Source of the DNA: Iphione sp. A-MEVVRFRX5
Taxonomy: Eukaryota
Direction: 5' to 3'
NCBI GenBank assembly: GCA_976226885.1
Contig: OZ320317.1
Coordinates: 82,026,001 to 82,090,000 of the forward strand
DNA length: 64,000 nucleotides
Under the pieces are notes generated by a model. That model was not told the DNA's origin. It worked only from the letters and a program-made list of their open reading frames with translations, and searched no databases. Made by a program: the position numbers and the translations under genes. Below are positions 10,397 through 34,300 of this stretch, piece after piece; the first letter of the stretch is position 1, and each line of letters opens with the position of its first letter.

Positions 10397-13300
10397 CTGC
10401 ACGGGTCGTTAAGGTCATCATCTCATGCACATCTCTTTTTTTTTAGCCAAAACTCTAGATAAAACAAAGCTGCTAGTAAAAATGCATCTTCTTCTATTCA
10501 TAATTAATGCAAAGAACATAACAAATGAAGCATAATTGACTAGACTTTATATGAGACAGAGCTGCCGATACAAATGCATCTTTTGCCATTAATGTTTAAT
10601 CATAAGAACATAAACGTTTGTAGCATGAAGGACCAGTTTCTATTTGGGAAAGAAATATGTGTCGGGTTAAACTCTGAATGAAGGATACAGTTCTCCTCGC
10701 CGGCTTGGTGGTTGGGTGGGCCGGGCAGGTTGAGAATAACCAGTTTGGCATCATGTGACTTCTCCACGATCACCTCATTGAGACGTACCGCCGTGTGCAT
10801 ACGTCGTACGTTACGGTTGTCTCTGTAGGGCGATAACAACAAAAAAAACGTTCAGAATCAGCTCAAAGGAAAATACTGCTTATTATGCGATCTGTACAGA
10901 GTCTTAAAGCGTAGAGGAGTATTCTACATGTCACAATGCGTCTGACCTACTGCTTCAAGCTGGACAATATGTGAACTTTCAGTGGGAAAATGAGATGCCC
11001 CAAAACTGTTTATTGCTTAACTTTTCAACTTCTGCTGTTAGATAGAGGCAACTCTGCATATAACAAAAAATGTACTCGCCGCTACTCAAGAGTGCGATCA
11101 AATAATAGCGTAAGCTATGAATAATATCTAGAAGGCAGAAAATCTAGACTTGGGACATGCAAACCGGTGATCTCTCTACGATTCTGGTGTGACGCTTATC
11201 AGTGATCCTGCGCATCTAGAGGACGTGTGGGCCAAACTAGTGATTTAACAGAGGCAGTAGCACTGGCCGAGTAGCGGTCGACTTGTTTTTATACATATAT
11301 AAGCTGGACAACCAGGCCGGATAGTCGAGAATAAAAGAAAACAGTTAACGAGATGATAAAAATTAACCCTTTACTATGTGAGAGAGACAGAGACAGGGCG
11401 ACCGAGAGATATAGAGAGACAGAGACGGAGACTCAAAAAGAAGAAGTATAGAAGATACAAATACGATACAAAAAAAATAATGTATAAGAAAAATATAAAT
11501 TGATATTAAATGCATGTACAGCCAGGAATCAAAATATGCCGAGCCAAAGAAGAATAAACCACTAGAATTAGGAAACTATTTCTTTCAAAAATATAATCTT
11601 AAAAGAAAACAGTGGTAAATTCAAAATGTGAGGCTGAGCGTCTAACGTTGGGATATGCTTGTTTCGGGACTGCACATTATGACTTCTGATGTCGAGGAAA
11701 TGATACAAGAAATGATACAAGAAGTAAATGTATATCAAATCTTGAAGCAGTTCAAAACAGCTTTCGATTTTATCTCTGAAGAAAGGAAGTCATTTTTTAA
11801 AAAAAATGATATTAGATAAACTCATGAGATATTTCCTTGGCGGTAAATTATGACATTAACCACATATATACTCCCTGGTTATAAACATGGCTCATCTATC
11901 AGCTAAGTACAAAATTATCGTAGCTTGATATGACGACCGACGAATATCACAGATGTGTATAAGATCACACATGATGGATGACAAAGTGAATCAAGTTATG
12001 GAAGCCTGGAGGAAGGGTCCTTTCCTGACAACCCTCGGCAACACCAGATTCTATATCAATGACACTATCACGGAGCAATAACGAGAATGGGACCAATGCA
12101 CTGACAAATGGAACTGACTACCATGTAAAAGAGATCGTACAACTGCGAGAGTTTATACCAGGCATATTACCAGCGACCCTGTTTGGCTAATCATTTGCAA
12201 CTGGGGATTTAAGGATGCTACAAGGACGCTCGTGTGGACAATCTGACATACGAAACTCGACGCTTTGTGGTTAAACCAGACAGCAGACGTGGCGCATTGC
12301 AGATATCCTTCAGGAAGCCTAGTCTTACTGTGTCCGACCTAAAACGGCGTGTATCTCACGGTGACTCCATTGACTGAAGCCTGCTTTCCATGTGTCCGAG
12401 CTGTCCATCCGGCTTCTGTACCAGATCGATCAATACAAATGTAATGTACTGGCCTATTTCCAGTTGTACAGTGCTATGTCTGTCGAGCCGACAATTGTCT
12501 GGGCTTCAGCACACAGAAATCCATTATGGGGTTCAGGTATTCTAGGCTGCAGCCTTTCATATGGAATCAGCGCATGTGTACTTGAGGCATATGGAAACTC
12601 AACTCAGACTGGATTCTATACCAGAATCCGGTCAGACAGATCCTACACATGGAAAGCGCCCCTAAATCAACTGCCGAAGATATTTGGATAACTTGGCTGG
12701 AAAGTATGAATGGTGTTGCAGATCATTATTGATTGAAAACTGCGAGTGCTACACATACATGTATGTGCTTTCTTCTGCTGACTCAACTTCGTGTCCAGAT
12801 CATAGTCTGTGTTTCCCTTGTCCATAACCCGTTATTCTGTCTATGGCCGAAATGATGAACCCTTCAATGATCAATTTCTATCCAGGTGGAATACATTGGG
12901 TTTCCCCCTCCACAACAGCATTCAGATCCAGTGGATCCAGATGGGTCGGGGGTGGGAGGTGGGGGGAGGGGGTTCGTTGGGTGCACACGCATCTCCTGTT
13001 AGAATAAAACACCTAGTCGTCTCCAGGTCCTATGCACATTACCTTGACTGATATCCATCCACTACAAAGAAATGAACCAAACGAACCCCCGCCCCCCAGC
13101 AAGGTGCTATGGCCTACCTTTGAAGTAGAATATGTGTGATTAAAAAAAAGTGCCTATCTGTATGTTGCTTCTTTAAGCGCCTGAAAGGACTACCCCAGCA
13201 GCATTAACCACGTCAGACCGAGCAGCCACGTGACATACAGTAGAACCTGCATACTGGACCAACCCAGAACAAGGGCCAGATTGTACTGGAACAAAGCCTT

Positions 13301-31300: not shown

Positions 31301-34300
31301 CCCACCATGAAAACAACCTGTGGAGGTGAAAAGACACATACATATACATGAAAATTAAGCCTAACACTTGGATGCAGCCTAAAGTGGGGAGAGAATTTTT
31401 TACAAATCGCCCTCTTTGTGGGGCAGACGACTCACCCGTGAGACTCTGTAGGCCGGCGCCTACGGTGGAGAGGAAGGAGCCGATGAGAATAACCCAAGGG
31501 TTCGGCCAACACAGGTTGGCCACAATCAGCCCGCCTCCAATACTCTCACCGTACCTGCAAACAACACGCATTTCACATACTACTTACACGGCGGCGACGG
31601 TACTTCGGGGCTATTAAAGCTCCGTTTGATCACGACAGCAAATAGGAGCTATCAAACGCACCATCTGAGCTGATTAACAGGAGAGATCGCAATCGCCTCT
31701 AAGCAATTCTTAAAACAAGCTTGGATGGTGCTACTTCATAGCATTTGCTAATATTCTCTTCATTTTACCAGAAGATATTCACTTCAGAGACGAAACTGAC
31801 CATGGTTCTTTTACTGTAACAGCGATGTACTTTAAATGAAAACCATTATGCACGTTCTGAATTAACAGGTATTTTCTTGACTGGCTGGTAAATCATGAAT
31901 CATGTAGGTTCAGTTGTTTTTATTTTAAAAGCAAAAAAAAAATCACATAACTTGGACACATAAACAATTTGTTTACTATACAGCTTACATTTCCACGGCT
32001 TAATAGTAGAATGTAAAAAAAACAAACTGTAAATGGAAATGTTCGGAAATTTCAATGCAAGAAGACGGAGCAGTACAGATAGAACAACTTACTTGTCTCG
32101 CAGAACTTGGCCATCGATGGTAGATCCAAAGAATACGACAGTAGATAAATCTATGAGTGAGTCAAGGCTACTTCACTGAGGTTGTAAGTCATTGGCTGGC
32201 ATTGACCTTAAGCTTCAGGTCAGGTCTGATCTCTGAATTTAACTGAGGCTCTAAGTAAATGGCCAAAATTAACCTTAGCTGGGTGCTCACATGTCAGATC
32301 TGATCTCTGAACTTCACTGAGGCTCTAAGTCAATGGCCGTCACCGACCTTAGCTGGATGCTGACACGTCAGATCTGAACTCTGAACTTCACTGAGGCTCC
32401 AAGTCAATGGCCGTCATCAACCTTAGCTGGATGCTGACACGTCAGATCTGATCTCTGAACTTCACTGAGGCTCCAAGTCAATGGCCGTCATCTTAGCTGG
32501 ATGCTGACATGACAGATCTGATCTCTGAACTTCACTTCAACGTTACGGTATAATCGCGACAGTGGCTGCCCTCCCTACACGCTACCAGTTGCCGAGGATT
32601 GGCACAACTTAGGAGAAAAACAAAAAAAAAAGAAAAAAAAACTACTTGCAAGTCTCAGCGTTAAGGACCTAACGTGCCCATTCCCCACTCCCCCAAAGAC
32701 GGCATTACTGCGTTGTTAGAAAAGTCACGCTCTGCACGTGTAACCAAGGATACAGACGAAGCCTGTCGTAAAGATGGCCATAATGGTCCCAATGGGGATG
32801 GACTTCTGGGCATCTGCTAAATCTCCTGACCGGTTCGAGCCGGCCATAATTCCTGTCGCCGAAGAAAAAAAGAGAGACGTGATATTAAAACGGATAAATA
32901 CATATGACGATCCTAATTCTATGTCCAGGGTTCCAAATTAACTTTTCTCCCCCAAAACTGAGCACCTGGGTACGAAACATCAAAAAAGAAATATGTTGAC
33001 CATCCGAGATAAAAGTTATTATGACGGGACGAAGAAAAGTTCAACTTCACTAATAACCGTTGACTAAAGTTTAATATTAAGTTTGAATCATATTTATGAT
33101 CTTTCCATGAAGAAAATGGAACTTTAATGGAACTAAGAAGACCTCACTAATAAGACCACTACTGGTTGTGATCTCAAGTGGTCTGAATAGGGAGTGGTCT
33201 TATTAGAGATGGGTATTTACAGGTACATGTATCTAATTTTCTTCCTTAAAATGGTCTTATTGGGGAAGTGGTCTGATCAGAGAGGTGGTCTTAGTCCGAG
33301 GGGACACTGTATGAGCTGCACGTGAGTGGCTCGCACTAGACGTTCACTACTTGGTTACCTGTGCAGGAAGGGAAGAAGATGGCGAGCAGGACGACGAAGT
33401 TGGTGGTAATGTCGGATATGATCTCCCCTTTAGACTCGTCTCCTTTCTCTTTCCCTCCGTTGCCGTCGGGCTTGCCGTTGATGCGGTCGCCAGTCTCGAG
33501 GTAGTTGTTCAAATAGTTCCCTACAAAGAAGCCAACAGGTGCAGCCTTCTTATTTTTTAAATATGAAAAATTGTGTATCAGCTCGTGTTACTCAGTTAAC
33601 GCTCACTATATAAAAACATGTATATATCAATGTTTTGTAATTCACATTTATATTGTCCCAATNNNNNNNNNNNNNNNNNNNNNNNNNNNNNNNNNNNNNN
33701 NNNNNNNNNNNNNNNNNNNNNNNNNNNNNNNNNNNNNNNNNNNNNNNNNNNNNNNNNNNNNNNNNNNNNNNNNNNNNNNNNNNNNNNNNNNNNNNNNNNN
33801 NNNNNNNNNNNNNNNNNNNNNNNNNNNNNNNNNNNNNGTGATGGCACCACTGGCCAGGCCGGGGATACCTGAGCGTTGTTCCACTGCACTATTCTCGAAG
33901 AACCTGCAGGAGTCCGAATCATTGTTTGGGCCGCCGCAGTACTTTGTCCACAGCGGGCTGCCCACGCTCTTGTTGCAGTAGGATTGGCCGTCTATTGTAT
34001 ATGCGCTTTGCTTTATCAGCCTATCTCCCACGTAGCATGGCCTGCATCAAAGAACAAGCCATTTTCAACAATCTGTTTTTTAAAGGTACACAAAAACTCA
34101 ACACTTCGAGCATGATCTAGTAGAACGGACTGAAACGTGAGAGGACTCATTTAACCGCACAGCTTTAAAATTTAAAAGGTGCCTAGTCGATTGATTATTT
34201 GCACCAGTGTTTGGGGGAACAATGAGATAAAACACAACCCAACACTGCTGCTAGCTTGGATGATGTCTGTGTGCACACTGTGCTCAAGACCAGCGGACAG

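What the first reader, a model, noticed from the sequence alone, without database searches (positions are those of the whole stretch)
10397..32753. Four U12 (minor spliceosome) introns in one KCC gene
Seen: four phase-1 introns (32151-32753, 24913-25353, 24508-24822, 10397-10688) start GTATCCTT. Each has a CCTTRAC/CTTTAAC branch box 9-11 nt before the AG and no polypyrimidine tract. The other introns with visible donors are ordinary U2 type. Established: this is the U12 signature, minor introns are well under 1% of introns, and host genes usually carry only one. Inference: output of this chloride-regulating transporter could be gated by minor-spliceosome activity at four points.
Basis: partly seen in the sequence, partly recalled or inferred. 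Interest (0 to 1): 0.72.

Follow-up and report, generated by a model that had tools for sequence, protein, structure and literature searches.

The report
Four minor-spliceosome introns in KCC gene
An invertebrate potassium-chloride transporter gene carries four introns of the rare U12 (minor-spliceosome) type where mammalian relatives carry two, and the same four occur in a sister gene and in other species, so this looks like an old inherited layout and not a special regulatory device.

Summary
On the minus strand a K-Cl cotransporter (SLC12A4-7-like) gene runs from about 41540 to 10305. The only four GTATCCTT words on that strand are donors of four phase-1 introns: 32753-32151, 25353-24913, 24822-24508 and 10688-10397. 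Each has a CCTTRAC or CTTTAAC branch box ending 9-11 nt from the intron end and no pyrimidine tract. Each junction joins exons at adjacent positions of the KCC profile TIGR00930. Fourteen other delimited introns have U2-type ends. U11, U12, U4atac and U6atac genes are all in this genome.

The 26254-26499 gap lies inside a U2-type intron and removes no coding sequence.

The same four U12 introns occur in a paralogue (contig C26) and in two other eukaryotic contigs (L018, L020). Other lineages lost intron 2 or have a U2 donor at the intron-3 site. The mouse/human catalogue (MIDB) lists two minor introns in each of SLC12A4-7. Their flanks fit introns 1 and 4 here.

So four is real and above the mammalian maximum of three. 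The best reading is ancestral retention. "Gating at four points" is untested, because no RNA run was listed. This is a new member of a known kind, of moderate interest. The scan's only other note on this feature (s1-356272) is on this same window.

The parts
10305..41540 (-). K-Cl cotransporter (SLC12A4-7-like) gene. 21 exons are placed. The reading frame is open through 17 exons, from 33520 to the stop codon at 10305-10307. The first exon(s) were not found.
   Evidence: Exon-by-exon TIGR00930 and PF03522 matches. In-script frame check gave 744 codons plus the stop. An N-terminal exon candidate lies at 41475-41540.
32151..32753 (-). U12-type GT-AG intron 1, 603 nt, phase 1. Donor is TCT|GTATCCTTG. 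It contains a 74-nt x 4.4 minisatellite.
   Evidence: The same site is U12-type in C26, L018 and L020.
32161..32169 (-). Branch box AGCCTTGAC of intron 1, ending 10 nt from the intron end.
32754..32852 (-). Exon upstream of intron 1 (99 nt), ending ...TTGFV plus 1 nt.
   Evidence: TIGR00930 positions 296-326. Acceptor with pyrimidine tract.
32093..32150 (-). Exon downstream of intron 1 (58 nt): (Y)[18 protein letters not shown](K).
24913..25353 (-). U12-type GT-AG intron 2, 441 nt, phase 1. Donor is TCC|GTATCCTTC.
   Evidence: U12-type in C26, L018 and L020. In L025 the donor is U12-type but the branch box is weak. Absent in L021 and in 8 ORF fragments.
24922..24930 (-). Branch box CTCCTTAAC of intron 2, ending 9 nt from the intron end.
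25354..25470 (-). Exon upstream of intron 2 (117 nt), ending ...IDIWWIV plus 1 nt.
   Evidence: TIGR00930 positions 695-752.
24823..24912 (-). 90-nt exon bounded on both sides by U12-type introns: (H)[29 protein letters not shown](Q).
   Evidence: TIGR00930 positions 754-782. Homologous ORF fragments from 19 sources.
24508..24822 (-). U12-type GT-AG intron 3, 315 nt, phase 1. Donor is CCC|GTATCCTTT (9 of 9 matches to consensus).
   Evidence: U12-type in C26, L018, L020, L021 and 11 ORF fragments. U2 donor at the same site in L025. Absent in 5 fragments.
24517..24525 (-). Branch box ATCTTTAAC of intron 3, ending 9 nt from the intron end.
   Evidence: TCTTTAAC-type boxes are in the MIDB list.
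24416..24507 (-). Exon downstream of intron 3 (92 nt): (Q)[12 protein letters not shown]...
   Evidence: TIGR00930 positions 785-812.
10397..10688 (-). U12-type GT-AG intron 4 (the last intron), 292 nt, phase 1. Donor is ACT|GTATCCTTC.
   Evidence: U12-type in C26, L018, L020, L021 and L025. The flank matches the mammalian ACT|GTATCC minor introns.
10408..10416 (-). Branch box GACCTTAAC of intron 4, ending 11 nt from the intron end.
10689..10822 (-). Exon upstream of intron 4 (134 nt), ending ...AGEEN plus 1 nt.
   Evidence: TIGR00930 positions 864-905.
10305..10396 (-). Last exon: (Y)[29 protein letters not shown] plus stop.
   Evidence: TIGR00930 positions 908-936.
26205..26842 (-). U2-type intron (donor GTGCAG, pyrimidine-rich acceptor) that contains the assembly gap 26254-26499.

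Best explanation
These are four genuine U12-type (minor-spliceosome) GT-AG introns in a functional K-Cl cotransporter gene of an invertebrate.

Inferred mechanism: U11 pairs with the /GTATCCTT donor. U12, whose GAGTAAGGAAAAT stretch is present in this genome's U12 gene, pairs with the CCTTRAC box and bulges the branch adenosine about 10-12 nt from the AG. U4atac/U6atac.U5 then carry out catalysis.

Origin: the four introns are not a novelty of this gene. They were inherited from an ancestral KCC gene that already had at least these four minor introns. Mammalian KCC genes keep two of them (the equivalents of introns 1 and 4). Other lineages deleted intron 2 or converted intron 3 to U2 type.

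Consequence: every mature mRNA of this gene needs the minor spliceosome, as mammalian KCC mRNAs do. Nothing shows that four introns gate expression more than one would.

Shown here: sequence signatures, exact profile-contiguous junctions, presence of the snRNA genes, and conservation. Inferred: actual U12-dependent splicing, orthology with the mammalian introns, and neutrality.
For: Signatures and junctions:
- The four donors match GTATCCTTT at 8-9 of 9 positions.
- Branch boxes lie 9-11 nt from the 3' end, and pyrimidine content there is 50-60%.
- All four introns are phase 1, in line with the known bias of minor introns away from phase 0 (PMC10639083).
- Junctions are contiguous in TIGR00930 across introns 2-4. 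The exon before intron 1 ends at about position 327.
- The frame is open over 17 exons to the stop.

Machinery:
- U12 scores 121.5 bits, U11 99.2, U4atac 90 and U6atac 106.8 in the same genome.
- Their recognition sequences are intact.

Conservation:
- Paralogue C26 has GTATCCTT donors plus branch boxes at the same four codon positions.
- L018 has exactly four GTATCCTT words on the gene strand, at the same four sites, in introns of about 62-250 nt.
- L020 has GTATCCT/GTATCCA donors plus TTCCTTGAC-type boxes at all four sites.
- These genes are only 59-71% identical in protein, while intron lengths differ widely between them and the donor and branch motifs persist.

Loss and conversion:
- Intron 2 is absent in L021.
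- L025 has a GTGAGT donor at the intron-3 site in the same phase.
- ORF fragments read FTVA-RIL (a U12 donor read through), FTVA-RE/RK (U2 donor) or FTVAQMEDNS (no intron).

Mammals: MIDB lists two minor introns per mouse/human SLC12A4-7 gene, with flanks TCT/TGT/TTT|GTATCC and ACT|GTATCC.
Against: No transcript evidence was obtained. No RNA run was listed for this stretch, so the junctions rest on protein-profile continuity and conservation.

No formal PWM scorer (intronIC) was run. I used consensus-match counts.

Orthology with the mammalian introns rests on three exon-flank nucleotides, intron order and position in the gene, not on an alignment.

Intron 3's box (TCTTTAAC) and intron 1's box (GCCTTGAC) each deviate from TCCTTAAC by one base.

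The species behind L018, L020, L021 and L025 are unknown, so the depth of the shared ancestry is not dated.
Confidence: 0.85

Rival explanations
1. One reading: four slow minor introns act as four serial or parallel checkpoints, so transporter output follows minor-spliceosome activity more steeply than in a one-intron gene, and selection keeps them for that reason.
For: All four have been kept as U12 type in two paralogues and in at least two other species at 59-71% protein identity. All mammalian KCC genes also remain minor-intron genes. Minor introns are reported to be slow or rate-limiting (PMC1557818).
Against: No expression or retention data exist here. Intron 2 was lost cleanly in L021 and in 8 ORF fragments. 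Intron 3 carries a U2 donor in L025 and is absent in 5 fragments, apparently without loss of the gene. Sheth et al. argue that additional U12 introns may not change kinetics. The pan-eukaryotic survey favours largely neutral dynamics (PMC10639083).
Confidence: 0.15
2. The introns look like U12 type but are spliced by the major spliceosome (hybrid or minor-like introns).
For: GT-AG ends are compatible with U2 splicing in principle. Contribution of the major spliceosome to some minor introns is documented, and it depends on the branch sequence (PMC8848931).
Against: Matches to GTRAGT are only 3 of 6. There is no pyrimidine tract. The branch box sits 9-11 nt from the AG, too close for typical U2/U2AF recognition. 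In PMC8848931 the consensus-type box of mouse Slc12a4 made splicing U12-dependent and U2-independent.
Confidence: 0.04
3. Artefact or dead gene: the locus is a pseudogene or is mis-assembled, so the introns have no present function.
For: Three assembly gaps lie within the gene span. The first exons were not found. No RNA run was listed.
Against: There are 744 codons without a stop across 17 exons. Conserved motifs are intact along the TIGR00930 profile. Two of the gaps fall in introns. The third, at 33663-33837, runs into the 3' end of the loop exon, which is otherwise intact.
Confidence: 0.02

Closest known systems
The two minor introns of each mammalian KCC gene (SLC12A4, A5, A6, A7) in the MIDB catalogue (PMC6717393 supplements). 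The mouse Slc12a4 intron was shown to be U12-dependent in vitro (PMC8848931).
   Same: Same gene family and the same GT-AG U12 subtype, with GTATCC donors and TCCTTRAC boxes. Exon flanks (GTN T| and AAC T|) and order in the gene fit introns 1 and 4 here.
   Different: Here there are four per gene. The two extra ones (introns 2 and 3) bound a 90-nt exon in the C-terminal domain and are not in the mammalian list. I could not determine whether vertebrates have U2 introns or no introns at those two sites.
Mammalian genes with three U12-type introns (sodium/hydrogen exchanger SLC genes; Sheth et al. 2006, PMC1557818), and SCN/CACNA1 channel genes with two (PMC2831892).
   Same: Several minor introns cluster in one ion-transport gene, more often than chance predicts.
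   Different: The families differ. Three is the reported maximum in human and mouse. This gene, its paralogue, and the L018 and L020 genes have four.
U12-to-U2 intron conversion and minor-intron loss as described across eukaryotes, for example in annelids (Larue and Roy 2023, PMC10639083).
   Same: At one and the same site and phase the intron is U12-type (window, C26, L018, L020, L021), U2-type (L025, ORF fragments P0002, P0018, P0019) or absent (P0011, P0014-P0017).
   Different: This is a single-gene series from unnamed metagenome-derived contigs, not a genome-wide count.

Membership tests
U12-type (minor-spliceosome) GT-AG intron | 5' splice site /RTATCCTT, extending well beyond GT | tested here: met
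   All four read GTATCCTT, with 8-9 of 9 matches to GTATCCTTT. The 12 other introns scored match at no more than 6 of 9.
U12-type (minor-spliceosome) GT-AG intron | Branch-site box TCCTTRAC-like, close to the 3' splice site (about 8-35 nt) | tested here: met
   GCCTTGAC, TCCTTAAC, TCTTTAAC and ACCTTAAC end 9-11 nt from the intron end. Two boxes differ from consensus by one base.
U12-type (minor-spliceosome) GT-AG intron | No polypyrimidine tract before the AG | tested here: met
   50-60% pyrimidines in the last 20 nt, against 60-85% in 10 of the 12 U2-type introns scored; two of those U2 introns are also at 50%.
U12-type (minor-spliceosome) GT-AG intron | The organism has the minor spliceosome (U11, U12, U4atac, U6atac) | tested here: met
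   All four Rfam families score above their gathering scores in G000. Recognition sequences were read.
U12-type (minor-spliceosome) GT-AG intron | Junctions used in RNA, and splicing dependent on U12/U6atac | not testable with these tools
   No RNA run was listed for this stretch, so read laying could not be used.
U12-type (minor-spliceosome) GT-AG intron | Intron type conserved at the orthologous or paralogous position | tested here: met
   C26, L018 and L020 are U12-type at all four sites. L021 is U12-type at sites 3 and 4. L025 is at site 4 and has a U12-type donor at site 2.
K-Cl cotransporter, SLC12A4-7 (NCBIfam TIGR00930; Pfam PF03522 C-terminal domain) | Matches along the whole family profile in the correct order | tested here: met
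   Exon-by-exon hits cover profile positions 75-936 in order on the minus strand.
K-Cl cotransporter, SLC12A4-7 (NCBIfam TIGR00930; Pfam PF03522 C-terminal domain) | Whole-protein score above the curated cut-off (953 bits) | not tested
Only single exons were scored.
Orthologues of the two catalogued mammalian KCC minor introns | Same codon position and phase as the mammalian minor introns | tested here: inconclusive
   The three exon-flank nucleotides fit (TCT/TGT/TTT| matches GTC T| here; ACT| matches AAC T| here). So do the order and the near-3'-end location of the second intron. No residue-level alignment to a vertebrate gene structure was possible.

The most novel reading that the evidence does not exclude
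The ancestral animal (at least bilaterian) KCC gene carried four or more minor introns, including a 90-nt exon defined on both sides only by minor-spliceosome signals. Vertebrates retain two of them. The set of genes found here then forms a natural series: U12 kept, converted to U2 at the same site, or cleanly deleted, with U12 introns as short as about 62 nt in L018. That series could be used to study U12-to-U2 conversion and how an exon between two minor introns is recognised.
Probability: 0.5. Interest if true: 0.5.

Novelty: new member of a known kind. Interest (0 to 1): 0.4.

Why it matters
KCC transporters set intracellular chloride and cell volume, and all four mammalian KCC genes depend on the minor spliceosome. 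This gene shows that the dependence is old and was once heavier, with four minor introns where mammals keep two. It also gives a compact example of retention, conversion and loss of minor introns at identical sites, and a rare exon flanked by two minor introns. That is useful for work on minor-intron evolution and on exon or intron definition by the U11/U12 di-snRNP. It does not by itself show any new regulation of chloride transport.

Tried and rejected
- RNA evidence: the look-up of sequencing runs (kind rna) listed no run, so read laying could not be used. None was listed, which does not mean none exists.
- Raw word count: GTATCCTT occurs 5 times against 2.26 expected, which is not significant alone. 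The argument rests on placement and phase.
- Plus-strand ATATCCTT (12303, 16388, 22735, 57544) and GTATCCTT (6699) are not at ends of coding frames, so I treat them as chance.
- Apparent duplicate exon: the TIGR00930 hit 32749-32889 seemed to contain a second copy of the FFPSxTG motif of exon 33520-33359. It is the translated pyrimidine tract of a normal U2 acceptor at 32853, so there is no exon duplication.
- Three further GTATCCTT words in the C26 paralogue (34912934, 34913761, 34919555) are not at coding exon ends.
- Degenerate U12 donors (RTATCYN) on the gene strand: none other than the four coincides with an exon end. 33868 lies in coding sequence (the IPG motif) and 27358 lies 5 nt inside a U2 intron.
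- Literature: no paper was found under phrases for consecutive, adjacent or multiple minor introns. The supplements of PMC11347168 are not held. So I could not establish whether vertebrate KCC genes have U2 introns at sites 2 and 3.
- The large representative-protein search was not used. The protein family was not in doubt, and the operators had asked that it be spared.
- The joined spliced protein was never sent to a search tool. It was translated only inside scripts, to check the frame.
- Gap letters were not filled.
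Full report
WHAT IS THERE

The window is G000:C11:82026001-82090000 of a 1.18-Gb genome in 89 contigs.

Six-frame searches with the K-Cl cotransporter profile TIGR00930 and the SLC12 C-terminal domain PF03522 hit a series of exons on the minus strand. They run in order from profile position 75 (window 37680) to 936 (window 10308). I placed the exons using open frames, splice-site context, profile coordinates and comparison with homologous genes. From 33520 to the stop at 10305-10307, 17 exons join into 744 codons without a stop. 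That joined translation was made only inside scripts, as a frame check.

Upstream I placed three further exons (37680-37534, 36856-36671, 35494-35283) and a Cys-rich loop exon starting at 34041. An N-terminal exon candidate lies at 41540-41475. The first exon was not found.

THE OBSERVATION

The count alone is not significant: 2.26 are expected, and 7 of 100 shuffles reached 5. The placement is what matters.

- Phase: each donor follows the first base of a codon (phase 1).
- Acceptor: each intron ends in AG.
- Junctions: the spliced sequence restores conserved KCC peptide, reading GFV|Y-LSTVVFF, WWIV|[15 protein letters not shown]|[13 protein letters not shown] and GEEN|[12 protein letters not shown].
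- Profile continuity: scored one exon at a time, the flanking exons abut in the profile. The exon before intron 2 ends at 752. The 90-nt exon covers 754-782. The next exon starts at 784/785. The exon before intron 4 ends at 906, and the last exon starts at 908. The exon before intron 1 ends at about 327. The single missing position at each junction is the split codon.
- Branch boxes: AGCCTTGAC, CTCCTTAAC, ATCTTTAAC and GACCTTAAC end 10, 9, 9 and 11 nt from the intron end.
- Pyrimidine tract: the last 20 nt are only 50-60% pyrimidine.
- Other introns: the 12 scored have GTRAGT-like donors (3-6 of 6 matches), at most 6 of 9 matches to GTATCCTTT, no well-placed branch box, and mostly pyrimidine-rich 3' ends. 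Two further introns, 23912-16100 and 15797-10823, begin GTAAGT. A scan for degenerate U12 donors found no fifth candidate at an exon end.

THE ASSEMBLY GAPS

The gap named by the scan's program (26254-26499) lies inside the U2-type intron 26842-26205. That intron has the donor CAG|GTGCAG and a pyrimidine-rich acceptor 49 nt past the gap. The exons on either side join in phase 1 as SQLKA|G-KGLTLV. The profile runs 541-574, then a 29-residue exon, then 602-686. No coding sequence is hidden there, and only the intron length is unknown. The nearest U12 intron is about 900 nt away.

A second gap (36184-36335) is also intronic. A third (33663-33837), outside the finding's span, hides the donor of the loop exon. 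I left all gaps unfilled.

IS THE MACHINERY PRESENT?

All four minor-spliceosome snRNA genes are in this genome, each above the Rfam gathering score: U12 121.5 bits, U6atac 106.8, U11 99.2 and U4atac 90. The U12 gene carries GAGTAAGGAAAAT, the complement of the branch box. U11 begins CAAAAGGGC, and U6atac carries AAGGAGAGA.

RELATED GENES

(a) A second KCC gene of the same genome (C26:34900386-34935838, plus strand; 62% protein identity) has GTATCCTT donors after ...CSFV+T...WWIV+C...IFTVA+C and ...AEEN+T. Branch boxes ACCTTAAC, TCCTTAAC, GCCTTGAC and a variant box, CCCTAAC, lie close to the AG. So it has the same four sites, phase and type. An SLC12 paralogue on C1 that scores lower against the KCC profile (perhaps NKCC-type; not classified) has uninterrupted exons across sites 1 and 4.

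(b) I searched the 90-nt exon's open frame against the protein collection. The read-through after FTVA reveals the donor type:
- -RIL- (or -RIP- in P0012), from CGT ATC CTN, marks a U12 donor. It occurs in 11 fragments.
- -RE- or -RK-, from C|GTGAG or C|GTAAG, marks a U2 donor. It occurs in 3 fragments.
- FTVAQMEDNS shows no intron. It occurs in 5 fragments.
- Eight of the fragments read WWIVHDGG straight through, so they lack intron 2.

(c) I fetched four of these loci.
- L018 (ENA ERZ25070844) carries a compact KCC gene. Its gene strand holds exactly four GTATCCTT words, at the same four sites, with TCCTTAAC, TTCCTTAAC, AACTTGAC and TTCTTAAC boxes. The introns are about 62, 63, 74 and 246 nt long.
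- L020 (ERZ25068685) has GTATCCTA, GTATCCTC, GTATCCTT and GTATCCAA donors, with TTCTTGAC, TTCCTTGAC, ACCTTGAT and TTCCTTGAC boxes, at all four sites.
- L021 lacks intron 2 and keeps U12 introns 3 and 4. Site 1 lies outside the fetched stretch.
- L025 (JGI 3300056599) keeps U12-type donors at sites 2 and 4 but has C|GTGAGT at site 3 in the same phase. That is a U12/U2 conversion.

Protein identity among these genes is 59-78%. Intron lengths differ widely (for intron 2, about 63 nt in L018 against 441 nt here) while the donor and branch motifs persist.

WHAT IS KNOWN

The MIDB catalogue lists two minor introns in each of mouse Slc12a4, a5, a6 and a7, and the human counts match (PMC6717393 supplements). 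The donor 12-mers there have exon flanks TCT, TGT or TTT (a Val codon plus T) and ACT (Asn AAC plus T). These fit intron 1 (GTC T|) and intron 4 (AAC T|) here. The second mouse intron lies near the 3' end of each gene, as intron 4 does. This orthology is an inference from three nucleotides, order and position, not an alignment.

The mouse Slc12a4 intron with box TTCCTTAAC was shown in vitro to depend on U12 and not U2 (PMC8848931).

In human and mouse, genes with two U12 introns number about 45, more than chance predicts. The maximum is three, in sodium/hydrogen exchanger SLC genes (PMC1557818; PMC6717393). [quoted passage not shown]

INTERPRETATION

The four introns are bona fide U12-type by every sequence criterion available, and the same layout is shared by genes 59-71% identical. 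The simplest account is inheritance from an ancestral KCC gene with at least four minor introns, followed by lineage-specific loss (intron 2) or conversion (intron 3). Mammals keep the equivalents of introns 1 and 4.

Repeated loss or conversion of two of the introns weakens it. So does the published argument that extra U12 introns need not slow splicing further. It remains possible.

The 90-nt exon bounded by two minor introns is real and is conserved in C26, L018, L020 and, with a weaker branch box at site 2, L025. I could not determine whether those two sites hold U2 introns or nothing in vertebrates.

LIMITS

No RNA run was listed, so no junction or retention data exist. No formal PWM scorer was run. 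The species behind the comparison loci are unnamed. No contig was taken for human, and no gap letters were looked up.

VERDICT

This is a new member of a known kind: additional U12 introns in a gene family already known to host two. Interest is moderate, mainly for minor-intron evolution.

Noticed in passing
window 32219-32536: More than half of U12 intron 1 is a minisatellite: a 74-nt unit in 4.4 copies at 90% match.
   Followed up: partly
window 30056-30482: A 65-nt unit in 6.6 copies abuts the acceptor of exon 30060-29886. The units repeat the 3' splice-site region, and only the exon-proximal copy ends in ...GTGTAG.
   Followed up: partly
window 33663-33837 (gap) and 33838-34041: The Cys-rich extracellular-loop exon of the KCC gene starts at 34041 and runs into an assembly gap, which hides its donor. 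The type of that intron is therefore unknown. The gap was left unfilled.
   Followed up: partly
G000:C15:12324101 (loci L012-L015): Another SLC12 paralogue has a GTATCCTT donor at TIGR00930 position about 148 with a weak branch box (ACCTGAAC). It is a possible U12 intron at a site that is uninterrupted in the window's gene.
   Followed up: partly
L018:8498-8558, 10101-10162, 10251-10323: In this unnamed compact genome the homologous U12-type introns are only about 62-75 nt long, with full GTATCCTTT donors and TCCTTAAC-type boxes.
   Followed up: partly
L025:2657-3581: At the intron-3 site, in the same phase, the donor is GTGAGT and the 3' end is pyrimidine-rich. The intron type has switched between U12 and U2 at a conserved position.
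   Followed up: partly
window 27358-27363: The U2 donor CAG|GTTAGT is followed at once by ATCC, so the intron starts GTTAGTATCCAG with a GTATCC word at +5. Probably coincidence.
   Followed up: no
window 47794-48104 and C26:34916531-34916846: A translated similarity of about 100 residues (about 48% identity) lies between the region upstream of the KCC exons here and an intron of the C26 paralogue. It is probably a shared repeat or transposon fragment.
   Followed up: no
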